From positions 62,001 to 126,000 of IMG/VR virus record IMGVR_UViG_3300010430_000003: a stretch of 64,000 nt of DNA; one strand, given 5' to 3'. The notes under the pieces are model-generated. The model had not been told where the DNA came from. It did not search any database and worked only from the letters and a program-made list of their open reading frames with translations. Shown piece by piece: positions 11,243-59,778 of the stretch. The translations under genes were made by a program, and so were the position numbers. Position 1 is the first letter of the stretch; every line of letters begins with the position of its first letter.

Positions 11243-11620
11243 ATGTCTGAAAAAAGCAACTGGTGGGAAACAGAGATGCTCAATCTTATGTTTCTCACGT
11301 ACGATCCAGTTTATGTAGCACTTTTTACAACTAATCCTGATGAAGATGCCTCTGGCACAGAAGCAACTGGTGGTTCATATGCAAGAGAATCTGTTGCAGC
11401 TTCTGTTTTTGTTGTTTTAACAGGATCTGCTGCTAATAATACAAATATTGAATTTACAGAAGCAACTGGCAACTGGGGCACTCTTTCTCATGCAGCCATC
11501 TTCACTTCTGCTTCTGGTGGAGATATGTTATATTACAGTCCGCTAGGAACATCAGTTGGAATTAACACAGGGCAAATCTTTAGAATTAACTCTGGCAGCT
11601 TGATTATATCGGAGGATTAA
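11243..11620 (+). CDS. small virion protein (tail-fibre-associated family), paralog 1
   Basis: YVALFTTNP...E.TGGSYAR...F.EATGNWGT.SH.AI...SGG.ML. Confidence 0.7.
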   Translation: MSEKSNWWETEMLNLMFLTYDPVYVALFTTNPDEDASGTEATGGSYARESVAASVFVVLTGSAANNTNIEFTEATGNWGTLSHAAIFTSASGGDMLYYSPLGTSVGINTGQIFRINSGSLIISED

Positions 11621-11622
11621 TT

Positions 11623-12000
11623 ATGAGTGAAAAGGGTGATTATTTAGAAAATTGGGTTTTGTTACAAGTTCTTAGTTCTTTTGATCCATTGTATATTGCA
11701 CTCTTTTCAGATAACCCTGATGAAGACGGATCAGGTACTGAATTTACTGGCGATAATTATGATCGAGCAACAGTTCCCTCTGGAACCCTTACAGTAACAA
11801 ACAATACAGCTTCTAATGCCGCAGTAATTCAGTTTTCAGAATCAACTGCAATTTGGGGCACAGCTTCCCATGTTGCAATTTATGATTCTTTGGCTGGTGG
11901 GAATCTTCTTTATTACAGTGCTCTTAATACCCCGGTAGAGATAGGTTTGTCGCAAGTTTTCCGCTTCGCGACATCTTCGTTAAATATCGTAGAAGATTAA
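11623..12000 (+). CDS. small virion protein, paralog 2
   Basis: Same length (125 aa) and colinear with 11243-11620. Confidence 0.7.
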   Translation: MSEKGDYLENWVLLQVLSSFDPLYIALFSDNPDEDGSGTEFTGDNYDRATVPSGTLTVTNNTASNAAVIQFSESTAIWGTASHVAIYDSLAGGNLLYYSALNTPVEIGLSQVFRFATSSLNIVED

Positions 12001-29725: not shown

Positions 29726-29946
29726 ATCTTTTAGTATCAAGCAAGATTTATTATGAATACCAACTCAATCCCTATCTCTATTCGGATCTACGACTCGAAA
29801 GGGGAATTGTGCACCCACTGAAGGGAGGTTTTTATGACTATAGTTATCCTCCCACGTCGCTCTCATCGATGATGGTAAGACCAAGTTATTTAGTTACAAG
29901 ATATATCTTAAATTTAAGAAGGTTGTGGAATGAAGGGGAAAATTAA
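29713..29946 (+). CDS. small ORF of the hNxxh family
   Basis: MDNLNLLVSSKIYY; overlaps both neighbours. Confidence 0.55.
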   Translation: MDNLNLLVSSKIYYEYQLNPYLYSDLRLERGIVHPLKGGFYDYSYPPTSLSSMMVRPSYLVTRYILNLRRLWNEGEN

Positions 29947-30322
29947 AGATGAATTAATACCCGGCTCATGGGTTGCAGTTTATAGAAATCTGCATCAAGA
30001 TTGTTTTTCGGTTCAAATAGATGGGAAAGTGGTTGCGCATGTTGAGCACATTATGCTTGATAATGTAAAATTTAGAGTTGGCAAGAAAGGCAGAGAAAGA
30101 GTTCTTAAAGAAAAGAGAAAGAACGTTCATGCTAAGATCTATGGAACTGTTAGAGAACAAACATTTGAGAATACACAGGTAGATTGGCCTAAAGCACATT
30201 ATAATCCATACAAGTATGAAACTTTTGTGGATGAACATCAAGAGCCTATTTATGAAGCGGAAAGTGTTTTTCTGAGTGACGGTAAATATATTCAATACAA
30301 GGAGTTAAATGAAAAAATATGA
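29930..30322 (+). CDS. conserved-looking hypothetical phage protein
   Basis: VYRNLH, GRERVLKEKRKNVHA, YNPYK. Confidence 0.75.
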   Translation: MKGKIKDELIPGSWVAVYRNLHQDCFSVQIDGKVVAHVEHIMLDNVKFRVGKKGRERVLKEKRKNVHAKIYGTVREQTFENTQVDWPKAHYNPYKYETFVDEHQEPIYEAESVFLSDGKYIQYKELNEKI

Positions 30323-30959
30323 TATCATTATTCTTTCGGGTGGATTTGATCCAATTCATGTTGGTCATTTGAGAATGATGCACATGGCCTCTAAGAAAGC
30401 AAAAAGTGTTCATGTTGGTGTTAATTCTGATGAATGGCTTATTAGAAAAAAGGGTTATGTCTTCATGCCGTTACAAGAACGATTGGAAATAATCAAAGCT
30501 TTTGATTGTGTAGATATAGCAACTTCGTTTAATGATAATTCTGACACCGCTAGTGACTTAATTGCCAAAATTAAAAAGGAATACCCGAGACGAGCAATTG
30601 CTTTTGGTAACGGTGGTGATAGGGGCAAAGGAAATACACCAGAACAAGTTGTCTGTGAAGATCTTGGTGTAGAAATGGTTTGGGGCTTGGGCGGAGAGGA
30701 TAAACCCCAATCAAGTTCATGGCTCGTAAACAATGCCATAGAACAGCTAGACCAACAAGATTCTACTGTAAACCACCCATCACATTATAATCAAGGGGGC
30801 ACTGAAGTGATCGATATTATAGCAGAACAGGGTCACGGTGAAAGCTTTTGTTATGGTAATGCGATGAAATATATTATGAGAGCCCCCCACAAAAACAATG
30901 AAAAGGAAGACCTTGAAAAAGCTATGTGGTATCTTAAGTGGTTAGTGGAAAATGTCTAA
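30309..30959 (+). CDS. cytidylyltransferase-like domain fused to a DUF3310-like domain
   Basis: SGGFDPIHVGH (HxGH), VNSDEWL, NGGDR, SSS; C-terminal VNHPSHY...GNAMKY..R...K...EDL.KA.WYL. Confidence 0.85.
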   Translation: MKKYDIIILSGGFDPIHVGHLRMMHMASKKAKSVHVGVNSDEWLIRKKGYVFMPLQERLEIIKAFDCVDIATSFNDNSDTASDLIAKIKKEYPRRAIAFGNGGDRGKGNTPEQVVCEDLGVEMVWGLGGEDKPQSSSWLVNNAIEQLDQQDSTVNHPSHYNQGGTEVIDIIAEQGHGESFCYGNAMKYIMRAPHKNNEKEDLEKAMWYLKWLVENV

Positions 30960-31266
30960 GCACAAGAAAATAATCGGAAAGCTCTTTGCCAATGATTTAG
31001 TGTCCGTGCAACCAATGGCGCAGCCCCTCGGCAACATTTTCTATACTTCGATTAAGTATTACTCTCTTTTCAAGAAAGAAGATGTTCTCGTTTACAAAGA
31101 ACAATTAAACCTTTTAATTGCTAAAAACACCATAAACGATGTTTTAATAAATAAAGCAGAAATACAAAAAAGTAGTGCTACCAAAAGATTTTTTGGAGGA
31201 GAAGCAAAAGTGCATTTAAAACAAATAAGGACGTTACTTGAAACACAAAAAATTATTGATAATTGA
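30952..31266 (+). CDS. small protein: capsid (gp23) Gol-like segment fused to an hNxxh module
   Basis: KKIIGKLFANDLVSVQPMAQPLGNIFY followed by QLNLLIAKNTI. Confidence 0.65.
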   Translation: MSKHKKIIGKLFANDLVSVQPMAQPLGNIFYTSIKYYSLFKKEDVLVYKEQLNLLIAKNTINDVLINKAEIQKSSATKRFFGGEAKVHLKQIRTLLETQKIIDN

Positions 31267-46576: not shown

Positions 46577-48175
46577 ATGATTAGCAAAAAAGAGATGGAG
46601 TTTTGGATCGAAAACGATCTTAACGTTCTGTTTAAGGGTCGTCATGGTGTTGGCAAAACATCCATGATTATTGATGCTTTCGAGAAGGCAGGTCTTAAAT
46701 GGAAGTATTTTTCAGCATCTACCATGGACCCATGGGTTGATTTCATTGGAATCCCCAAAGAGAGAGTGGAAAGTGATGGCAGTTCTCATCTAGAACTTGT
46801 AAGACCAAAAGAGTTTTCAAATGACGATGTTGAGGCTCTGTTCTTTGACGAGTATAATCGCGCTCCAAAGAAAGTTCGCAACGCTGTTATGGAACTCATT
46901 CAATTTAAATCAATTAATGGGAAAAAGTTTAACAACCTCAAAATTGTGTGGGCTGCTGTTAATCCTGATGATGACGAAGATGAAGTTTATGATGTTGAAG
47001 TATTAGACCCCGCACAACTTGATAGATTTCAAGTCCATGTTGATATTCCATATAAACCGCAATATTCATACTTTGCAGATAAATACGGATCAGCAATCGC
47101 TAAGAAAGCCATCGAGTGGTGGAAATCCCAGTCTGCAGAGACTCAAAAGGATGTATCTCCCCGACGACTAGATTATCTTGTTGATATCTATGAGAAGGGT
47201 GGTAAGGTTGATTATGTCCTGCCAAAAAGCGCAAACAAAAAGTATTTCCATGAATTGATGGGGTCAGTTCAACTTGAGAAAGAGTATGAAAAGCTTAAGT
47301 CTTCCTCTGAAGAAGAAAAGAAAGCCCTGCTCTCCGAAGAGGGTTTTTATGCACGAATGCACCCATATTTGGAACAAGAGAATTATCTTGAAAAGTTTTT
47401 GAGATTCTATCCACAAGAGAAAATCGGCGTGTTGGCTTCTTCTGACAAGAACATTCTTTCTCTCTTGTTGGAACATGAAGCCACTGTTGATGCATATAAA
47501 GAAGTATTAAGCGGAATGGTTGAGGCTGATTTGAATCAAGATACTGCTAAGTTTATTACTACCGCAAGAGACAAAGGTCTCGAAGAGGCCAAAAAAGACT
47601 TAATGAGAGGTAGCTTCTTTAACTATGTTCTTACTAAAGAATGGTGGAAAAATAATAATCTCGTTAAGACTTGGGATGTTGAGAGCACAGAAGCGCATTT
47701 CAAGAAAAGAGAATCCGACGACTTTCAGCGTACAATGAATTGGGTAACCACCTATACTAGCGGATATATGCAACAATATACTGATGATAGGATTCTTATT
47801 AAGCGCTCTGAAAACACAAATGGGCGCAGGTCATGTCTCGAAAATGCTGCGATATATTTTTATCCCAATCAAACTCATGACAGTTTGAAAGCAACACTTA
47901 ACATGATTAGTAACTATCTCGTTGCTTCGCAAGCAAATACGATCAAAGAAGACATGAACTCATATACTTATAAACATACTCCGTTCATCTTCAACTATTG
48001 CATTGAAATTCTTGAGAAGGAAGATCCCACTTATTTTGATAATCTCCAAAATGCGAATCTTCCTTGGAACCATTCTCTCATGCCCTTTAAGGTTCTACTT
48101 GAAAGGTTAAATAAAAAGCAAAATATCTATAACGTTATGCGCAACTTTGGCTTTGGGTTAGTGAAAAAGACATGA
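46577..48175 (+). CDS. MoxR/AAA_5-type ATPase
   Basis: GRHGVGKT, FFDEYNRA, AAVNP, LDPAQLDRF, SPRRL. Confidence 0.9.
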   Translation: MISKKEMEFWIENDLNVLFKGRHGVGKTSMIIDAFEKAGLKWKYFSASTMDPWVDFIGIPKERVESDGSSHLELVRPKEFSNDDVEALFFDEYNRAPKKVRNAVMELIQFKSINGKKFNNLKIVWAAVNPDDDEDEVYDVEVLDPAQLDRFQVHVDIPYKPQYSYFADKYGSAIAKKAIEWWKSQSAETQKDVSPRRLDYLVDIYEKGGKVDYVLPKSANKKYFHELMGSVQLEKEYEKLKSSSEEEKKALLSEEGFYARMHPYLEQENYLEKFLRFYPQEKIGVLASSDKNILSLLLEHEATVDAYKEVLSGMVEADLNQDTAKFITTARDKGLEEAKKDLMRGSFFNYVLTKEWWKNNNLVKTWDVESTEAHFKKRESDDFQRTMNWVTTYTSGYMQQYTDDRILIKRSENTNGRRSCLENAAIYFYPNQTHDSLKATLNMISNYLVASQANTIKEDMNSYTYKHTPFIFNYCIEILEKEDPTYFDNLQNANLPWNHSLMPFKVLLERLNKKQNIYNVMRNFGFGLVKKT

Positions 48176-49467
48176 AAGAATATTGGGAAATAGCCTCTCT
48201 CTTGGAGAATCATAATGTTCTGTTTTCAGAATTTTGGGAAATGGGGGAACCTGTTTTTACAGATGAAATTGAAACAGCGGCAGTATGTTGGAATAAAGAA
48301 GGTCAAAGAATAAACTATCTTTTTAACGAGACGTTTTGGAACTCTTTGAATGCCTATCAAAAAAGCTTCGTTATCTCTCATGAAATTCTTCATGTGTTGT
48401 TCAAACACGGGAACCGTCTAAAGAGTATTATCGGAGACGCTCAAAGAATGCATATTGCAAATATTGCTGCTGATATCATTGTAAATGAATTTCTCTTTCA
48501 GAAGTTTAGATTCCAACCCCTTTTTATGGGAGACTTATATGATAAGTTAATAACTGAAAAGGGAGTCTTTGGGGAAAAAGGTGAATCTATCTTAACCTTT
48601 GAAAGATATTATGCTAAACTAATGAAAGAGGGTGATGAGTGCGAAGGAAAACAATCATTAGATGATCATGAAGTTAGTTTTGGAGATTCTGGTGAGGGAG
48701 ATGGCGGTTCTTCTTATGATGAAGGCAAAGAAGAAATCCCGGACATTGTCATTGAAGATATCATTGAACAAGCGATTGAGAAGTATGATGAGAAAACAGC
48801 TAAAGAAATGAAGAAGTTGTACACTTCTCAAGAATTTAGCGATGCTATGGGTCAAGTGGCTGGTTCAATGGCCGGTAATTGTGTCAAGACAATCCAGAAG
48901 TTTGCTAAGGTTCGTAAACAAAAGTGGATAACTTTAGTTAAGGATTGGACTCGTCGAAAAATTAAAGAGTCTGTTAATGAAACATGGATTTGGCCCAACC
49001 GTCGGTTAACTCTTTTTGAAGGTGGTGATTTCTTCTTACCCGCAGAATACATTGAAGAGAAAGAAGAGAAAGACAAAGTGAATGTGTGGTTGTTTATGGA
49101 TACAAGCGGCTCTTGTGTCTCTTTTGCTAAGAGATTCTTTAAGGCGGCAGAGTTTATCCCTGATGATTATTTCAATGTTAGATTGTTTTGTTTTGACACA
49201 AGAACATATGAAACAAACTTAGAATCAAGACAACTTTATGGATTTGGTGGCACAAGATTCAATATTATTGAGACCAGAATCCAACAAGAAATGAAGGTGT
49301 TGAAAACAAAGAAATATCCTGATTCTGTTTGGATATTGACAGACGGGTGGGGAAACGATGTCAAGCCTGAGAAACCTGAAAGGTGGAAATGGTTTATGAC
49401 TGATTATCATTCAACCAAGAATATACCCAAACAATCAGAGGTATATAAACTGTCTGATTACGAGTAA
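48172..49467 (+). CDS. metallopeptidase + VWA-like protein (DUF2201-like)
   Basis: ISHEILH, NIAADI, MIDAS DTSGS, GGT, LTDG. Confidence 0.88.
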   Translation: MKEYWEIASLLENHNVLFSEFWEMGEPVFTDEIETAAVCWNKEGQRINYLFNETFWNSLNAYQKSFVISHEILHVLFKHGNRLKSIIGDAQRMHIANIAADIIVNEFLFQKFRFQPLFMGDLYDKLITEKGVFGEKGESILTFERYYAKLMKEGDECEGKQSLDDHEVSFGDSGEGDGGSSYDEGKEEIPDIVIEDIIEQAIEKYDEKTAKEMKKLYTSQEFSDAMGQVAGSMAGNCVKTIQKFAKVRKQKWITLVKDWTRRKIKESVNETWIWPNRRLTLFEGGDFFLPAEYIEEKEEKDKVNVWLFMDTSGSCVSFAKRFFKAAEFIPDDYFNVRLFCFDTRTYETNLESRQLYGFGGTRFNIIETRIQQEMKVLKTKKYPDSVWILTDGWGNDVKPEKPERWKWFMTDYHSTKNIPKQSEVYKLSDYE

Positions 49468-51936: not shown

Positions 51937-52127
51937 TGAATAAGATTATTAGTTATATGCTTTTGAGTGAAATTTATTCAAGTCAAGTTATACAACATTA
52001 TATAATGAGATTTAGAGCTACATTATCAAACGCTAAATGTAGAGAGCATCTTGGATTTTGGTGGGGACCACACAGATACACTAGAAACTATACCTATGTT
52101 GTGAGAATGAATAAAGAAAATCTATGA
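51933..52127 (+). CDS. small ORF of the hNxxh family
   Basis: MNKIISYMLL. Confidence 0.55.
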   Translation: MMNKIISYMLLSEIYSSQVIQHYIMRFRATLSNAKCREHLGFWWGPHRYTRNYTYVVRMNKENL

Positions 52128-52375
52128 ATTTAAACATAATGATAGCAAGAGGTATCATTCATGATAAAACCAAGAACTTGTTGGGCTCCGATCCGTTAAG
52201 CTTTGAACTGAGAACATCGCTGCACACCGCAAGGAGAATAAGAAGTATCAAGGATGGTTGGGAGGTTAGCAACCCTTTTCCTTTATTGATCGCCTTGGAA
52301 GAAATAGATGAAACTGGACTCTTGAAAGTAAGCATAACAACTTTTATTGATAGAAGGCTATATGAAGAAATATAA
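52124..52375 (+). CDS. small ORF of the hNxxh family
   Basis: MNLNIMIARGII; ATGA overlap. Confidence 0.6.
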   Translation: MNLNIMIARGIIHDKTKNLLGSDPLSFELRTSLHTARRIRSIKDGWEVSNPFPLLIALEEIDETGLLKVSITTFIDRRLYEEI

Positions 52376-53969
52376 AACAGGAAATGAATTACTATTATCT
52401 CTCTTGGAAGGTTCGAGGAAGCTTGAGGAGAATGTCGCTTGCACTCTTGGACCGAGAGGCAACAATGTCATTTTAAGACCCTTGGGTAGTAATCCAATTA
52501 TCACTAAGGATGGTGTTACTGTTGCTAAGTTCACTGATCTTGAGGATGAGATTGAAGACTTGGCTTGTCAAATTCTTAAACAAGCTTCAATTGAAACAGT
52601 TAAAGAAGCTGGAGACGGAACAACAACCTCCACAGTTTTGGCGAATGCTATATTTACAGAGTCCTCTAAGTATATTCTTAGCGGGGTTACTCCTATCTCT
52701 CTTAAGCGAGGGATGGATAAAGCGGTCCGGAGAATCAATTGCGAGATTGAAAAGAGAGCAACTCCGATATCAACAAAAGAAGATATAAAGAGTATTGCAA
52801 CAATATCATCTAATAACGATGCAGATATTGGTGATTTAATTGCTAATGCTGTGGATGGTATTGGCCGTGATGGTTCTATTGTGGTGGAAGATGGAAAGAG
52901 CACCCAAACAGTTCTTGAGTTTGTTGAAGGTTTAAGGCTACAGGGTGGTTTTCAATCACATCATTTTGCCAATGATAATATTAGAAATGTTGTATCATAC
53001 AAGGATCCTTATTTTCTGATTACAGACCATGTAATTGATGATTTGGAAGAACAACTGCTTCCCGTACTTCAACTTGTACTAAGAGATAAAAAGCCTCTAA
53101 TCATTATTGCTGATGGTTATGGCGAAGAAGTAAGTGCTGCTTGTATCTACAACGCTCTTCAGTCTAGAAAGAATTTGAATAACGCTGTAAAAGTAGCTTG
53201 CTTAAAGGCTCCATCTTTTGGAGAAGAGAGAACTAAGGTTCTTGAGGATGTTGCTATTTCTGTGGGAGCTAAGTTCTTCAGTATGTTTGCTGGTGATAAT
53301 ATTGCTGATGCTAAATTAATTGATTTGGGGGGTGCTGAAAAGCTTGAGGCTAATGGTTACTTCACAACTATTATTGGCGGTATGGGTGAACCAGAAAGGA
53401 TTGAAGAAAGGATTGATGCTCTAAAGGAAGAAATTGATAACGCCCCCGTTAACGAAGGGGCTAGAATTCAAGAAAGAATTACACGGCTTGGCTCTGTTGT
53501 TGCTATCATTAAGGTTGGTGGTCACACTGATGTAGAAGTCGGTGAGATTAAAGATAGAGTTAATGACGCGCTTGAAGCCGTCAATTCAGCTAGGATTGAA
53601 GGGGTGGTAGCAGGAGGAGGTAGCACTCTTCTTAATATTGCTCTTAGGCTCGAAGAAGAAAGATATGAAGAGTCTGATCTCTTTAATGAAGAAGAAAAGA
53701 TAGGGGTGAGAATTTTATTAGAGAGCATTAAGTCTCCGTTTAAAAGAATCGCTCTTAACTCTGGTTTTTCATGGGAGGTTCTAGTAAATAAAGTCAAAGA
53801 GCAAGAAGGAGAAATGGGTGTAGATTTCGTCACAGGAGAGCTTAAAGACTTAAAGGAAGAGGGAATTATTGACCCCGCTAAAGTCACTAGAGTTGCTCTG
53901 CAAAACGCGATATCAGCAGCCTCAACACTTATTACAACAAATAATGCTATTGTCGAAATTCCTCACTAA
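52362..53969 (+). CDS. groEL: chaperonin GroEL-like protein
   Basis: TLGPRG, ITKDGVTVA, AGDGTTTSTVLA, GVVAGGG, IIDPAKV. Confidence 0.96.
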   Translation: MKKYKTGNELLLSLLEGSRKLEENVACTLGPRGNNVILRPLGSNPIITKDGVTVAKFTDLEDEIEDLACQILKQASIETVKEAGDGTTTSTVLANAIFTESSKYILSGVTPISLKRGMDKAVRRINCEIEKRATPISTKEDIKSIATISSNNDADIGDLIANAVDGIGRDGSIVVEDGKSTQTVLEFVEGLRLQGGFQSHHFANDNIRNVVSYKDPYFLITDHVIDDLEEQLLPVLQLVLRDKKPLIIIADGYGEEVSAACIYNALQSRKNLNNAVKVACLKAPSFGEERTKVLEDVAISVGAKFFSMFAGDNIADAKLIDLGGAEKLEANGYFTTIIGGMGEPERIEERIDALKEEIDNAPVNEGARIQERITRLGSVVAIIKVGGHTDVEVGEIKDRVNDALEAVNSARIEGVVAGGGSTLLNIALRLEEERYEESDLFNEEEKIGVRILLESIKSPFKRIALNSGFSWEVLVNKVKEQEGEMGVDFVTGELKDLKEEGIIDPAKVTRVALQNAISAASTLITTNNAIVEIPH

Positions 53970-55991: not shown

Positions 55992-57188
55992 ATGGCAGAC
56001 CAAGTTTTTCATGAAATCTCTTTCTCGGAATTCACTCGCGTAGCACCGTACATTATTGACGCGGGTTATCCAATCATGCTTCGTGGGAAGCATGGAATTG
56101 GAAAATCAGAATTGGTTTATTGGCTTGCAGAACATCACTGCAAGCTTCCAATTGTTGAGCGGCGAGCTAGTCAAATGGATGTGGGTGACCTTGTTGGTCT
56201 ACCCGTTCTTAAAGATGGGAACACTGGCTTTGCTCCACCGGATTGGTTGGCACGAGCATGTAATGAGCCTGTTGCCCTTTTCCTTGACGAAGTGGATCGT
56301 GCTACATTGGAAGTAGCACAAGGTATTTTCGAACTTTGTGATTCTCGGAAGATCTACGGTAACACACTTCACCCCGGAACTAAGGTCTTTGCTGCTGTTA
56401 ACGGCGGCGCTTCTGGTTCACAATATCAAGTGCGCGAGATGGATCCTGCTGAGCTAGACCGGTGGTCAGTATTTGATGTTCGTCCATCTGTGGATGATTG
56501 GCTTGAGTGGGCTTCCAATTATGGAAAGGTTGAGAACATTGTTCTTGAGTTCCTTGCTGGTAATCGGGAGCATCTTGAGAATATCAACGAACATGACGCA
56601 AGCATTGTTTATCCCTCCCGTCGTTCTTGGGTGCGATTTGATCGCGTGCTTAAGCAGATTAATGATTCCGGGGGTGATTTCTATACCTTCAAGGGTTTGG
56701 AAAACATTGGATCATCCATCATTGGTCTTTCCGCTGCGGTAGCGTTCGGTGAGTTTGTTCGAACTTACAATACTGCTGTTACTTTCGAGGATGTCCTTAA
56801 AGGTAATAAAAAGAAGAAGTGGAAAGACTTGGATTTCGAGCAATACAACATGATTGGTCGTTACCTGAAACATCAAGCTCCGGAAAGCCCTGACTACTGG
56901 CGCACAAACGAAGTCGAACAACCAGAACCAACCTCCAGCGAAATGAACAATGTTCGTGAATTCCTGTTGGAGTGTCCTGACGAAATCCTGATTAACGTGA
57001 CGCGCCTCGCTCACCCAATGGTTTCATCAACCCTCACCTCTCCTCCCCGTACTCTTCGAAACAAAAAGCGCAAGAGTGCTAAGGACAAGAAATCTCTCAA
57101 GCTCATGGAGAGCCTTAAGACCAAAATGCGAGAGGCTTCTGTGTATATGGCCAATAAGGCTGACGAAGAAAAGGCTGAAAAAGAATAA
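55992..57188 (+). CDS. MoxR/AAA_5-type ATPase (second copy)
   Basis: GKHGIGKS, FLDEVDRA, AAVN, MDPAELDRW, PSRRSW. Confidence 0.9.
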   Translation: MADQVFHEISFSEFTRVAPYIIDAGYPIMLRGKHGIGKSELVYWLAEHHCKLPIVERRASQMDVGDLVGLPVLKDGNTGFAPPDWLARACNEPVALFLDEVDRATLEVAQGIFELCDSRKIYGNTLHPGTKVFAAVNGGASGSQYQVREMDPAELDRWSVFDVRPSVDDWLEWASNYGKVENIVLEFLAGNREHLENINEHDASIVYPSRRSWVRFDRVLKQINDSGGDFYTFKGLENIGSSIIGLSAAVAFGEFVRTYNTAVTFEDVLKGNKKKKWKDLDFEQYNMIGRYLKHQAPESPDYWRTNEVEQPEPTSSEMNNVREFLLECPDEILINVTRLAHPMVSSTLTSPPRTLRNKKRKSAKDKKSLKLMESLKTKMREASVYMANKADEEKAEKE

Positions 57189-57224
57189 GTTCGCGGAAGG
57201 TGAGGCCACCTATTTTAAGAGCCA

Positions 57225-57329
57225 TCGTGTGAGCTAGATCTGGGGTGCTTGTTCATTCATTGTACTTTGGGCGACATCTATTCGTTTCCTAAAGTCAGAA
57301 CAAGGCGGGGTTCAATTCCCCCACACGTA
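57225..57329 (+). ncRNA. tRNA-like RNA with an extended inner arm
   Basis: CGTGTG/CACACG acceptor-like stem, GGGG-TTCAATT-CCCC T-arm, CTTGTTC/GAACAAG and ACTTTGG/CTAAAGT inner stems. Confidence 0.6.
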
Positions 57330-57344
57330 CTTTAAGGAGGTTTA

Positions 57345-57689
57345 ATGAAGAAGTTAATTATTGTTGCATTGTTGTTATGTGGTTGTATAACAACCAAGAG
57401 TGTGGCAGATGAAAGAGCAGAAACAGTTGAGTATATCAATCAATCTTTAGAAGATGCTAAGGCAGAGAGATTCTTACTTGAAGTAATGTATCTGTGGGGA
57501 GAAGGTAAGCCCTTTTATGTTACGAGAGTTGATATTATCAATATAGCGCAAGATTCTGATGAGCAGCTTGCTTGGTTTTGTACCTTAACAACGATTGATA
57601 AATTATCAGGAGCAACAACATCTAAGAAGTTTTCTGTCCCTGTGGACCGTACATTTAGCGGACATAACTTTGTTATTAGTTGGTATTGA
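57345..57689 (+). CDS. putative lipoprotein
   Basis: MKKLIIVALLLCGC lipobox-like signal; RBS AAGGAGG. Confidence 0.7.
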   Translation: MKKLIIVALLLCGCITTKSVADERAETVEYINQSLEDAKAERFLLEVMYLWGEGKPFYVTRVDIINIAQDSDEQLAWFCTLTTIDKLSGATTSKKFSVPVDRTFSGHNFVISWY

Positions 57690-57694
57690 TCTTT

Positions 57695-57766
57695 TCGGAG
57701 ATCGTCTAACTGGCAAGACACAGGACTTTGAATCCTGCAATCTAGGTTCGAACCCTAGTCTCCGAA
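57695..57766 (+). tRNA. tRNA-Gln(TTG), CCA not encoded
   Basis: TCGGAGA/TCTCCGA acceptor, GTCT/AGAC D stem, CAGGA-CTTTGAA-TCCTG anticodon arm, CTAGG-TTCGAAC-CCTAG T arm. Confidence 0.95.
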
Positions 57767-57767
57767 T

Positions 57768-58022
57768 ATGAATGTGGAAAGAAATGTGCATATGGAAAAA
57801 GATATTAGAATAGCTCATTTTAAATATGATGTTAATTTGTATTTAGCTTCTCTTGTAATTTGGGAATATGGCATCTTCTACTACGGTCGCGTCCGCTCAC
57901 GACATCATAATTTATATACGAGTAGCATATTAGAAATTGACATCCCTAATATTTTAGGGACCCTTATGGTCATAGGGAAGTTCCCCAAGCCATTCAGAGA
58001 AATCAATAAATACTATGAATAG
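57768..58022 (+). CDS. small ORF with an hNxxh module
   Basis: DVNLYLASLVIW. Confidence 0.5.
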   Translation: MNVERNVHMEKDIRIAHFKYDVNLYLASLVIWEYGIFYYGRVRSRHHNLYTSSILEIDIPNILGTLMVIGKFPKPFREINKYYE

Positions 58023-58209
58023 AACTTTAGTATTAATTTTTGGTTTTGGTGTAGAGATTATATTAGTGCAGCTAATTCAATTAGCTTCTTACAAAGATAT
58101 GATTTGGTTATGCTATATTCTATTATTTGTAGTGCTGTTTGTTTGTATTTATTGGTGGTATAATTTCTGGCTATGTGTGGGATTTAATAAATGGCGAGAG
58201 AGAATCTAG
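58015..58209 (+). CDS. small membrane protein
   Basis: Two hydrophobic segments. Confidence 0.55.
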   Translation: MNRTLVLIFGFGVEIILVQLIQLASYKDMIWLCYILLFVVLFVCIYWWYNFWLCVGFNKWRERI

Positions 58210-58213
58210 TACA

Positions 58214-58254
58214 TAAAAAATTACTGTTGAAAAACTGTGATAGTTAACTATAAT
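58214..58254 (+). promoter_or_regulatory. early promoter
   Basis: TAAAAAATT-N4-TTGAAAAACTGTG-N5-AACTATAAT (TTGAAA-N16-TATAAT). Confidence 0.75.
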
Positions 58255-58290
58255 AGAAAAATGACAGGGTATTTTGAAAAGGAACTGTAA

Positions 58291-59778
58291 GTGAATAAAC
58301 CAGACGGTATTTCTAAAGAAGAATTCTTCAAGGAATTGGATAAGCTTGTTGAACTCGATAAGAAGGCTAAAAAGTATAGTCTTTCTAGAGATGTTCTTGC
58401 ATTGCTTAAGGATGAACCATTCTTTGCATGCGTATCTCGCTTTGTTACAAAAAGGCGAACAACCCAAATTCCAACTGCGGCGATTTATATCGACAAGAAG
58501 ACATTTCGCCCCGTGATGATTTACAACCCTCGCTTTATGGTTTCTTTGCCGATGGAACAACGCAAGGGAATTATTAAACATGAGTATTATCATCTGATTC
58601 TGAACCACATCACCCAGAATCGGATGGACTTCAATAAGAAGAACCAGAAGCTTTGGAATGTTGCAATGGATCTTGCAATCAACTCCTTTCTTATGGAAGA
58701 ACTCCCAGACTTTGCTCTATTTCCAACTAAGGGGATGTTTAAAGACATGCCAGCAGAGAAATCTTCTGAATGGTATAAACAAGCAATCCTTAACGACGAG
58801 GACGTGCTTGAGCAGTTAGGTTTAGATGAAAACGGTGAACCAAAGCCTTGTCCTAACTGTGGCGGGTCAGGTAATGTCTCATCTGATGAAGATGGTGAGC
58901 AACAAGGCCAAGGTAATGGTGGGGAGGAAGGACAAGAAGGACAAAGTCAAGGTGGGCATAGTCACGGTGATAGTGATCAAGAGTGTGACTGTGACAGTGG
59001 GCAGTGTTCTCATAACCCCGGAGAAGGTGGTGGAGGGGGAGGTAATGTAAAGCCATGCCCTTGTTGTAATAATCATGGCATTGATGATCATTCTTTGTGG
59101 GATGATTTGTCGGAAGAAGAAAGAAACATTGTAGAGAAAAAGATGCGGCGAGTTCTTTCTGATGCTGTCCATGAAGCAAAGCGGCAAAATAACTCCAAGG
59201 GTTGGGGTACTGTTTCTGTTCATGTTCAAGGGTATCTTGAAAAGCTTCTTAAGAATAGCCTTAATTGGAAAGGCATTCTGCGAATGTTTGTTCAAGCTTC
59301 TATCAAGGCTGAACGGTATTCTACCATTAAGAAAGTTAACAAGAGGTATCCATGGCTCCATCCGGGTAAGGCTCGTCGAAGGACAGCTAATATTGCTGTG
59401 GCTATTGATCAGTCAGGTTCAGTTGGTAATGTTCTCCTAACTAAGTTCTTTGCGGAATTGAACGCTCTAAGCAAAATTGTAACCTTTACTGTGATTCCTT
59501 TTGATCATGAGGTCTTTGAAGAAAAGGTCTATAAGTGGCAAAAAGGGCAAAAGTTTGAACCTCACAGGGTATTGTGTGGAGGTACTGATTTCTCTGCACC
59601 AACTAGGTATGCTAATGAAAACGGTCCGTTTGATGGTTTGATTATGCTTACCGATATGGAAGCCCCTGAACCTATTCCTGCTCGAATGCAGCGAATCTGG
59701 GTAACTTCTGAATCCTGTGCACGTAGTATGTACTACAAGCCCACCTCTGAAAGAGTTCTAGTGATTCCTGATGAGTGA
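58291..59778 (+). CDS. metallopeptidase + VWA-like protein (second copy) with a Cys/Gly-rich insert
   Basis: IKHEYYH, WNVAMDLAIN, DQSGS, GGTDF, LTD; insert CPNC...CDC...CPCC. Confidence 0.88.
   Translation: MNKPDGISKEEFFKELDKLVELDKKAKKYSLSRDVLALLKDEPFFACVSRFVTKRRTTQIPTAAIYIDKKTFRPVMIYNPRFMVSLPMEQRKGIIKHEYYHLILNHITQNRMDFNKKNQKLWNVAMDLAINSFLMEELPDFALFPTKGMFKDMPAEKSSEWYKQAILNDEDVLEQLGLDENGEPKPCPNCGGSGNVSSDEDGEQQGQGNGGEEGQEGQSQGGHSHGDSDQECDCDSGQCSHNPGEGGGGGGNVKPCPCCNNHGIDDHSLWDDLSEEERNIVEKKMRRVLSDAVHEAKRQNNSKGWGTVSVHVQGYLEKLLKNSLNWKGILRMFVQASIKAERYSTIKKVNKRYPWLHPGKARRRTANIAVAIDQSGSVGNVLLTKFFAELNALSKIVTFTVIPFDHEVFEEKVYKWQKGQKFEPHRVLCGGTDFSAPTRYANENGPFDGLIMLTDMEAPEPIPARMQRIWVTSESCARSMYYKPTSERVLVIPDE

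What the first reader, a model, noticed from the sequence alone, without database searches (positions are those of the whole stretch)
30952..31266. Free-standing major-capsid 'Gol' segment fused to a mini-gene module
Residues 5-31 (KKIIGKLFANDLVSVQPMAQPLGNIFY, nt 30964-31044) match the conserved T4-type major capsid stretch, which I recall in T4 gp23 as RRAIPNLIAFDICGVQPMNSPTG. In T4 this stretch lies in the Gol peptide, which binds EF-Tu and triggers the Lit abortive-infection protease (established knowledge). Here it occurs in a 104-aa protein in the replication region, with no capsid gene in this window, followed by the family motif LNLLIAKNTI. Inference: a capsid-mimic decoy against capsid-sensing defences, or an EF-Tu modulator. 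It also shows that the mini-gene family can capture functional peptides.
Basis: partly seen in the sequence, partly recalled or inferred. Interest (0 to 1): 0.78.

Follow-up and report, generated by a model that had tools for sequence, protein, structure and literature searches.

The report
Small phage protein mimicking capsid segment
A small, fast-evolving phage gene among the replication genes carries a stand-alone copy of the most conserved stretch of the phage's own capsid protein, the stretch that a classic bacterial suicide defence recognises in phage T4; about two dozen other uncultured phages carry similar stand-alone copies, and none has been described.

Summary
The ORF is real: 30952-31266 (+), 104 aa. 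Residues 5-38 are homologous to the T4-type major capsid protein (MCP) segment gp23 99-131, which covers the Gol region. Pfam Gp23 scores 27 bits (cut-off 24.4), the best PDB hits are T4 gp23 chains, and the match to the phage's own MCP is 53% identical. That MCP lies 1.4 kb upstream of the window.

It is not a decaying duplicate. A syntenic orthologue (110 aa) exists in a related phage. Neighbouring genes are 72-94% identical, but this gene is only 33% identical, and it still keeps the MCP-invariant residues. Synonymous sites are saturated, and the overlaps with both flanking genes are conserved.

The rest of the protein is a predicted helical tail with no known family.

Pattern scans of IMG/VR found about two dozen further short ORFs carrying the same segment. 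They have at least six architectures, including a true mini-gene family with a shared C-terminal module. Deposited phage genomes showed no full-length match to the four queries tried.

Best reading: a trans-acting mimic of unassembled MCP, made with the replication genes, that competes for whatever recognises this segment. A capsid-sensing defence decoy is the leading candidate (about 0.35). The partner is untested.

The parts
30952..31266 (+). Small gene, 104 aa (P0001): an MCP-derived N-terminal peptide followed by a helical tail
   Evidence: ORF. Pfam Gp23 is above its cut-off. A syntenic orthologue, P0002, exists. dN is 0.68 against 0.04-0.19 in neighbouring genes, with dS saturated.
30964..31065 (+). 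Gol-like segment, residues 5-38. It is homologous to T4 gp23 99-131 and to residues 82-115 of the phage's own MCP
   Evidence: Seven of the 8 superfamily-invariant MCP residues in this stretch are kept and the eighth is R to K. The ANDLVSVQPM core is identical to the own MCP in amino acids but differs at synonymous sites in 6 of 10 codons.
31066..31263 (+). C-terminal tail, residues 39-104: predicted alpha-helical, basic, with no known family
   Evidence: AlphaFold2 predicts helices 42-80 and 85-103 with pLDDT 71-88 in the best blocks. No Pfam hit, and PHROG matches are only marginal (phrog_27318, E=0.0011). It is unrelated to the MCP prodomain (hhalign probability 0.3%). Tail pI is 9.6.
30952..30959 (+). 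8-nt start/stop overlap with the upstream nucleotidyltransferase-DUF3310 gene (30309-30959)
   Evidence: The same overlap is present in the related phage (L001 10001-10008). This implies co-transcription and probably coupled translation.
31238..31266 (+). 29-nt overlap with the start of the 5'-3' exonuclease (FEN) gene (TTG at 31238)
   Evidence: In L001 the same position carries ATG and the overlap has the same length. The invariant FEN N-terminus partly forces conservation of the last 10 residues of the small protein.

Best explanation
The ORF is a real accessory gene, co-transcribed with the replication genes. It encodes a soluble, basic 104-aa protein. Its first ~38 residues are a diverged copy of the most conserved linear stretch of T4-type MCPs (the Gol region plus the first P-domain strand), carried on a ~65-residue helical tail. 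It cannot build a capsid. It most likely acts in trans as a molecular mimic of newly made, unassembled MCP: the displayed peptide binds whichever factor recognises this stretch on nascent MCP, and because it is made ahead of or apart from the late capsid gene, it occupies or titrates that factor. The leading candidate is a host abortive-infection sensor keyed on this invariant stretch, either of the Lit/EF-Tu type or another capsid-sensing system. That would make the protein a non-activating decoy of the phage's own molecular pattern. Shown here: the homology, the free-standing state, purifying selection on the motif, rapid divergence elsewhere in the protein, and recurrence in other phages. 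Inferred: early timing, action in trans, the identity of the partner, and blocking rather than triggering.
For: The match is significant and specific to gp23 97-131. A syntenic orthologue is 33% identical while neighbouring genes are 72-94% identical; dN is 4-18 times that of neighbours and dS is saturated, yet the ORF length, both gene overlaps and the MCP-invariant residues are kept. The core is identical to the own MCP in amino acids but differs in 6 of its 10 codons, so this is selection and not recent copying. The same segment stands alone in P0003 and in about two dozen further short ORFs of IMG/VR contigs, in several unrelated architectures and in genomes of 26-60% GC. Where flanking genes could be identified they are replication or nucleotide-metabolism genes, and other copies sit in arrays of unnamed small genes. 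Column conservation in the free copies tracks that in MCPs (Spearman 0.45, p=0.003). This points to a shared intermolecular partner, because the free copies lack the rest of the fold. In T4 this stretch is a known trigger and binding site: the 29-residue Gol region binds EF-Tu domains II-III and licenses Lit, and it is the most conserved part of gp23 (PMC3014915). Gp23 is also what CmdTAC senses (PMC11618068). The stretch borders regions that are flexible before capsid expansion (gp23 66-105 and 132-160 are unresolved in the unexpanded head, PMC9546572). It is low-confidence in AlphaFold2 monomer models of both the own MCP (residues 64-157) and P0001, which fits an exposed linear epitope.
Against: No partner was identified and no binding was modelled. 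In E. coli, translation of the Gol region is what activates Lit (PMC3014915), so an unmodified copy would trigger suicide rather than block it. A decoy reading therefore needs the observed differences to uncouple binding from activation, and that is untested; the differences are loss of the MCP-invariant RR pair across the free copies and loss of the invariant Ala in half of them (this ORF keeps the Ala). EF-Tu is too abundant to be titrated by a small accessory protein. The host is unknown (marine sediment) and no defence gene is linked to this phage. Early expression is inferred from operon context only: promoter scans are at chance level and no RNA run was listed. Fast evolution also fits relaxed constraint.
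Confidence: 0.35

Rival explanations
1. It modulates the MCP folding and translation pathway for the phage's own benefit. The peptide binds EF-Tu and/or a chaperonin, the factors that the gp23 N-terminal quarter engages in T4. It would prime, pace or restrict them before bulk MCP synthesis, or adjust host translation.
For: Gol binds EF-Tu and inhibits its GTPase; the first quarter of gp23 binds EF-Tu more stably (PMC3014915). The gp23 N-terminus targets fusion proteins to GroEL (PMC3012670, citing Snyder and Tarkowski 2005). This phage encodes its own GroEL (window 52347-53969, Cpn60 E=1.5e-56) and a ribosomal protein S21 gene upstream of the window. The L101 small protein is collinear with gp23 residues 12-132, the EF-Tu/GroEL-binding quarter.
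Against: Housekeeping partners such as EF-Tu and GroEL are very conserved, which does not explain a dN 4-18 times that of neighbouring genes. The distribution is patchy and rare. No GroES/gp31-like feature is present. Whether other carriers have a phage GroEL is unknown.
Confidence: 0.25
2. It is a strand mimic acting on capsid proteins themselves. It docks onto MCP or prohead surfaces that normally receive this stretch. It would delay premature self-assembly, or act as a dominant-negative poison of the capsids of co-infecting T4-like phages.
For: The kept residues are exactly the MCP-invariant ones, as expected if they contact the rest of the MCP. In some contigs other conserved MCP segments also occur as mini-ORFs: the spine-helix segment in L134, and a C-terminal motif together with the Gol segment in L111. 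That looks like a set of assembly-interface mimics. In T4 the N-terminal region takes part in intra- and inter-capsomer contacts after expansion (PMC9546572).
Against: It would also interfere with the phage's own, nearly identical MCP segment. The gene is located with replication genes and not with head genes. The fusion partners are very diverse, including Tat-like signal peptides.
Confidence: 0.15
3. It is a functionless relic of a partial MCP duplication that happens to remain open.
For: Some short ORFs in other contigs lie next to further MCP pieces and may be broken or duplicated MCP genes (L127/L139, L128, L163). The family is very rare. No expression data exist.
Against: With dS of 1.2-2.4 between the two phages, a neutral sequence would be randomised and closed by stop codons in a 37% GC genome. 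Instead both orthologues keep an open frame of 104 and 110 codons, in-frame indels, the same overlaps with both neighbours and the invariant motif. The synonymous-only differences from the own MCP in the core argue for selection on the peptide.
Confidence: 0.08
4. It is a member of a mini-gene family in this window that has captured a functional peptide.
For: Such families do exist elsewhere: arrays of mini-ORFs sharing a C-terminal module ending in LRWS, some with MCP-derived N-termini.
Against: No paralogue of this ORF and no second copy of the motif exists in the window. The tail-module HMM does not hit any window ORF.
Confidence: 0.05

Closest known systems
Gol region of T4 gp23 (activator of the e14 Lit protease through EF-Tu)
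   Same: It is the homologous stretch. P0001 residues 5-38 align to gp23 99-131, with Q115, P116, M117, P120, G122 and F125 kept in all free copies and A108 and D110 kept in this ORF and most others.
   Different: Gol is an internal part of a 521-aa capsid protein made late. Here the stretch is the N-terminus of a 104-aa protein encoded among replication genes. The RR pair that is invariant in MCPs is KK here and varies across the free copies. Binding to EF-Tu or Lit is untested.
T4 gp24 and other full-length MCP paralogues
   Same: They are derived from the MCP gene and are found in the same kind of phage.
   Different: gp24 keeps the whole HK97 fold and builds the capsid vertices. This protein covers only Pfam profile positions 13-73 of 376.
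T4 Alt.-3 extension variants that block the capsid-triggered CmdTAC defence (PMC11618068)
   Same: This is a small (about 100 aa) phage accessory protein that can neutralise a defence triggered by Gp23.
   Different: Alt.-3 has no reported capsid similarity and is proposed to act by interfering with antitoxin degradation. Here the protein carries a copy of the trigger protein's own segment.
Capsid-targeting sequence of T4 internal proteins (a short portable N-terminal peptide; named from general knowledge)
   Same: A short peptide module is attached to unrelated small proteins in T4-type phages.
   Different: The sequence is different and it is derived from the MCP itself. No evidence of packaging exists, and the genes lie outside the head module.
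Phage mimic or decoy anti-defence proteins such as the DNA mimic Ocr (general knowledge)
   Same: The proposed logic is the same: mimic the sensed molecule in order to occupy the sensor.
   Different: No described decoy is a copy of a phage's own protein pattern. No such case appeared in the literature searches.

Membership tests
T4-type major capsid protein (Pfam PF07068 Gp23, HK97 fold) | Sequence match to the family profile above the curated threshold | tested here: met
   27.0 bits against a cut-off of 24.4, E=3.7e-6. P0002 scores 34.2 bits and P0003 45.5 bits.
T4-type major capsid protein (Pfam PF07068 Gp23, HK97 fold) | Complete capsid body (P domain, spine helix, A domain), 400-600 aa, with the profile covered end to end | tested here: not met
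   Only profile positions 13-73 of 376 are aligned and the protein is 104 aa. The clade MCP HMM hits positions 81-114 only. The tail is helical with no MCP similarity. The protein contains a homologous segment but is not a capsid protein.
Gol peptide (Lit activator) | Homology to gp23 residues around 93-122 | tested here: met
   Alignment to T4 gp23 from NC_000866 and to PDB gp23 chains.
Gol peptide (Lit activator) | Binds EF-Tu domains II-III | not testable with these tools
   No complex prediction or binding assay was available. The property is taken from PMC3014915.
Gol peptide (Lit activator) | Licenses Lit cleavage of EF-Tu between Gly59 and Ile60 | not testable with these tools
   This needs a bench assay. 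The host is unknown and no lit gene is linked to this phage.
   No paralogue by BLASTP or phmmer, and the motif is unique.
LRWS-tail mini-gene family (found here in other IMG/VR contigs) | C-terminal module of about 45 aa ending F.F.DE.D...F.LRWS | tested here: not met
   An HMM of the module hits many mini-ORFs in loci L114, L115, L132, L134, L147, L164 and L174, but none in the window.
Co-chaperonin GroES/gp31 | Match to the Cpn10 profile | tested here: not met
   No Pfam hit other than Gp23, even at E up to 10.
Phage anti-defence mimic/decoy (functional class) | Evolves much faster than neighbouring core genes | tested here: met
   33% identity against 72-94% for neighbours; dN 0.68 against 0.04-0.19.
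Phage anti-defence mimic/decoy (functional class) | Expressed before the trigger (early or middle) | tested here: inconclusive
   The gene overlaps replication genes on both sides. Promoter scans are at chance level and no RNA run was listed.
Phage anti-defence mimic/decoy (functional class) | Binds and silences an immune sensor | not testable with these tools
   Neither the sensor nor the host has been identified.
Decaying pseudogene fragment | Neutral divergence, frame disruption, no conserved ORF in relatives | tested here: not met
   Both phages keep an intact ORF, in-frame indels and the motif across saturated dS.

The most novel reading that the evidence does not exclude
T4-type phages encode a previously unrecognised class of small proteins that display copies of the invariant segments of their own capsid protein: the Gol stretch, and in some contigs the spine-helix stretch. 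These would serve as non-activating decoys for bacterial immune sensors that use those segments as molecular patterns. This ORF would be one member, and the varied partner domains (a helical tail, the LRWS module, Tat-like leaders) would tune location or block activation.
Probability: 0.3. Interest if true: 0.9.

Novelty: new variant of a known kind. Interest (0 to 1): 0.74.

Why it matters
The Gol stretch is the most conserved part of T4-type capsid proteins and the first phage "pattern" shown to trigger an abortive-infection system. Why it also binds EF-Tu has been open for decades. Free-standing copies keep the same invariant residues without the rest of the capsid fold. This suggests those residues serve an interaction in trans and not only capsid packing. 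The copies also provide small, expressible probes for finding the partner. If they are decoys, they would be a new anti-defence principle: a phage mimicking its own molecular pattern. That is directly testable with the Lit, CmdTAC and CapRel systems in laboratory E. coli. Pfam-based annotation labels these ORFs "major capsid protein", which miscounts capsid genes in viromes.

Tried and rejected
(2) A recent duplication or gene conversion from the own MCP: rejected, because the synonymous sites differ.
(3) The tail derives from the MCP prodomain in permuted order: a weak BLAST hint (E=0.32) was rejected by hhalign (probability 0.3%).
(4) Membership of the LRWS tail family: rejected.
(5) GNIF as a signature of free copies. 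All five exact matches in IMG/VR are free copies. However, a relaxed scan showed Q, E or K at that position in both free copies and true MCPs, so only Asn itself is restricted to free copies. Three of the GNIF copies were also found by that very pattern, which is ascertainment bias.
(6) More orthologues: word-indexed and exhaustive protein searches found only P0002 and P0003. FEN-anchored scans of IMG/VR and JGI metagenomes found only identical copies.
(7) Microdiversity: contigs from four marine-sediment runs are identical across the gene.
(8) Expression: no RNA run was listed.
(9) Promoter, terminator and T4 late-promoter scans: at chance level.
(10) RNA families and repeats around the ORF: nothing.
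(11) Structure: the AlphaFold2 model of P0001 is low-confidence (pLDDT 68.7, pTM 0.33), so no fold search was run. ESM Atlas neighbours are short Gp23-labelled clusters that cannot be told from MCP fragments.
(12) Bacterial genomes: three chance hits to the GNIF pattern, none Gol-like.
It was rebuilt without that row.
(14) The primary Gol papers (Bingham 2000; Copeland and Kleanthous 2005; Snyder and Tarkowski 2005) are not held, so the 13 critical Gol residues could not be mapped.

Full report
OBSERVATION. The window is bases 62001-126000 of a 210,326-bp IMG/VR contig from marine sediment. ORF 30952-31266 (+) starts with ATG and encodes 104 aa (P0001). It cannot extend upstream, because a TAG lies in frame at 30943-30945.

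The similarity to capsid proteins is significant. Pfam PF07068 (Gp23) gives E=3.7e-6 and 27.0 bits against a curated cut-off of 24.4, covering profile positions 13-73 of 376. PHROG 138 'major head protein' gives E=3.3e-5. A profile of the two orthologues finds T4 gp23 chains as the top four PDB hits, at gp23 residues 97-126.

The window holds no MCP gene and no other MCP-like fragment. The phage's own 566-aa MCP ends about 1.4 kb upstream of window base 1, in a T4-like head module that also has a portal, a prohead protease and a ribosomal protein S21 gene. It matches P0001 residues 5-38 at 18/34 identity, E=5e-10.

The 'family motif LNLLIAKNTI' is unique to this ORF. No window ORF is a detectable paralogue.

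IS IT A GENE? An exhaustive search of 1.84 billion cluster representatives found one relative, P0002 (110 aa, E=2.3e-5; pairwise 33% identity over the full length, E=1e-16). It sits in the same slot of a related phage, between the nucleotidyltransferase-DUF3310 gene and the 5'-3' exonuclease (FEN), followed by DnaB and RNR.

Thirteen neighbouring proteins are 72-94% identical between the two phages, but the small protein is only 33% identical. With dS saturated at 1.2-2.4, dN is 0.68 for the small gene against 0.04-0.19 for its neighbours. Despite this divergence both phages keep:
- an open frame of similar length, with in-frame indels;
- the 8-nt start/stop overlap with the upstream gene;
- the 29-nt overlap with the FEN start (TTG here, ATG in the relative);
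- the capsid motif.

The ten-residue core ANDLVSVQPM is identical to the own MCP in amino acids but differs in 6 of its 10 codons, always synonymously. The peptide is therefore selected, not recently copied. A decaying untranslated duplicate is excluded.

The last ten residues are partly constrained by the overlapping, invariant FEN N-terminus. Copies in several marine-sediment metagenomes are identical. No RNA run was listed.

ANATOMY. Residues 1-38 are the capsid-like peptide. Residues 39-104 have no Pfam hit and only a marginal PHROG hit. AlphaFold2 predicts them as long helices (42-80 and 85-103, best blocks pLDDT 71-88). The peptide itself is low-confidence (pLDDT 56-62; overall 68.7, pTM 0.33). 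The protein is basic (pI 9.8) and soluble, with no clear heptad pattern. There are no RNA families or notable repeats on either strand.

WHERE THE STRETCH SITS IN A CAPSID PROTEIN. In T4, gp23 residues 66-105 and 132-160 are disordered in the unexpanded head. L106 is the first ordered residue, and the N-terminal region becomes ordered only through inter-subunit contacts after expansion (PMC9546572). The homologous stretch therefore spans the end of the N-arm and the first P-domain strand. In an AlphaFold2 monomer model of this phage's MCP, residues 64-157 are likewise low-confidence.

The Gol function maps to a 29-residue part of this region. It binds EF-Tu domains II-III, licenses Lit, and is the most conserved part of gp23 (PMC3014915). 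The gp23 N-terminus also directs fusion proteins to GroEL (PMC3012670), and Gp23 is the trigger of CmdTAC (PMC11618068).

THE SAME STRETCH STANDS ALONE IN OTHER PHAGES. P0003 (151 aa) carries it at its C-terminus, in an array of small genes where a 153-aa neighbour also has a Gp23 hit.

A back-translated pattern for QPM-xx-P-x-GNIF found five IMG/VR stretches, none of them an MCP. Two are this phage. The other three are new short ORFs, each above the Pfam cut-off on the first ~50 profile positions only:
- L098, 82 aa, directly after a clamp-loader gene;
- L099, 130 aa, between a tRNA nucleotidyltransferase gene and a DUF1599 gene;
- L101, 191 aa, in the same position as L099.

L099 and L101 are 33% identical while their neighbours are 53-59% identical. 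L101 is collinear with gp23 residues 12-132. The same pattern in 596 Gb of bacterial genomes gave three chance hits.

Relaxing one residue of the pattern gave 90 loci. About 60 are true MCPs or ~1000-aa proteins with the motif near residue 700. About two dozen are distinct short ORFs of 58-160 aa. They include:
- a coherent family with an N-terminal Gol-like stretch and a shared C-terminal module ending in LRWS. That module recurs in many neighbouring mini-ORFs, so these are true paralogous mini-gene arrays;
- one array member (L134, 106 aa) that instead carries the MCP spine-helix segment (PF07068 positions 136-198, 45 bits);
- four ORFs that join a Tat-like leader to the stretch (judged by eye).

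A few short ORFs lie beside other MCP pieces and may be broken genes. Deposited phage genomes gave only MCP hits, with no full-length match. The literature searches found no description of such proteins.

CONSTRAINT PROFILE. Across six free copies and eleven MCPs, column conservation is correlated (Spearman 0.45, p=0.003). QPM and P are invariant in both sets, and G and F are invariant in the free copies and nearly so in MCPs. The RR pair and the Ala that are invariant in MCPs vary in the free copies. Three of the six free copies were found with a pattern that fixes eight of these positions, so only P0001-P0003 are unbiased.

MECHANISM. The free copies lack the fold that would explain these residues by packing. 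Their retention therefore points to an intermolecular partner shared with unassembled MCP. Several observations fit a host-interaction accessory gene:
- rapid divergence outside the motif;
- patchy distribution;
- varied fusion partners;
- placement next to replication or nucleotide-metabolism genes, or in arrays of unnamed small genes.

I therefore favour a trans-acting mimic of nascent MCP. A non-activating decoy for capsid-sensing immunity is the leading version (0.35). The rivals are:
- an EF-Tu or chaperonin modulator (0.25; the phage encodes its own GroEL);
- an assembly-interface mimic (0.15);
- a functionless relic (0.08).

The main objection to the decoy reading is that Gol translation activates Lit in E. 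coli. A decoy must bind without activating, and this is untested.

COMPARISON AND NOVELTY. The protein contains a Gp23-family segment but fails the defining features of a capsid protein. It is homologous to Gol, but the Gol activities could not be tested. It belongs to no mini-gene family in this window. I rate it a new variant of a known kind: a capsid-protein segment redeployed as a stand-alone module. There is a 0.3 chance that it represents a categorically new anti-defence principle.

Noticed in passing
window 52347-53969 (+): A phage-encoded GroEL-type chaperonin (Pfam Cpn60_TCP1 E=1.5e-56; PHROG 5725 E=4.5e-126). No GroES/gp31-like gene was recognised next to it; the 83-aa ORF at 52124-52375 has no Pfam hit.
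   Followed up: partly
window 46577-49467 and 55992-59778 (+): Two paralogous gene pairs. Each has an AAA+ (MoxR/CobS-like) ATPase followed by a DUF2201 putative metallopeptidase, with the VWA-like DUF2201 domain detected only in the second pair. PHROGs labels the second genes 'HNH endonuclease', which looks like a misnomer.
   Followed up: partly
window 11243-11620 and 11623-12000 (+): Tandem paralogues of 125 aa each, 46% identical, just upstream of the tail sheath gene.
   Followed up: no
contig upstream of the window (L084): A T4-like head module (portal, S77 prohead protease, 566-aa MCP) that also contains a ribosomal protein S21 gene (PF01165) between the protease and MCP genes.
   Followed up: no
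window 57694-57767 (+): A single tRNA-Gln (UUG) gene.
   Followed up: no
window 29930-30322 (+): A homologue of mycobacteriophage L5 gp82 (PF25735, E=5e-33), two genes upstream of the small ORF. It is absent from the same position in the related phage L001.
   Followed up: no
L114, L115, L132, L134, L147, L164, L174, L178 (IMG/VR loci): Arrays of paralogous mini-ORFs that share a C-terminal module of about 45 aa ending F.F.DE.D...F.LRWS, which has no Pfam family. Some members have MCP-derived N-termini (Gol-like, or spine-helix in L134:4214-4534). No deposited phage genome has a full-length match to the two members queried (L174, L178).
   Followed up: partly
L124, L143, L153, L157: Short ORFs that join a twin-arginine (Tat)-like leader (RRxFL[KG] plus a hydrophobic run) to the Gol-like stretch. 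This was judged by eye only; no signal-peptide predictor was run.
   Followed up: no
L111 (126-aa ORF); L127/L139; L128; L163: Short ORFs in which the Gol-like stretch is joined to, or lies beside, other MCP pieces, such as the C-terminal YCPYVPL motif in L111. These may be deletion products of tandem MCP copies or broken genes.
   Followed up: no
L108, L110, L129, L137, L183 and others: Proteins of about 1000-1190 aa with the MCP motif near residues 690-890, meaning an MCP body preceded by a very long N-terminal extension.
   Followed up: no
L101:6646-10083: A ribonucleotide reductase of 1145 aa, compared with 809 aa in the window. It carries an inserted segment with intein-like and HNH-like features, judged by eye from the translation.
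   Followed up: no
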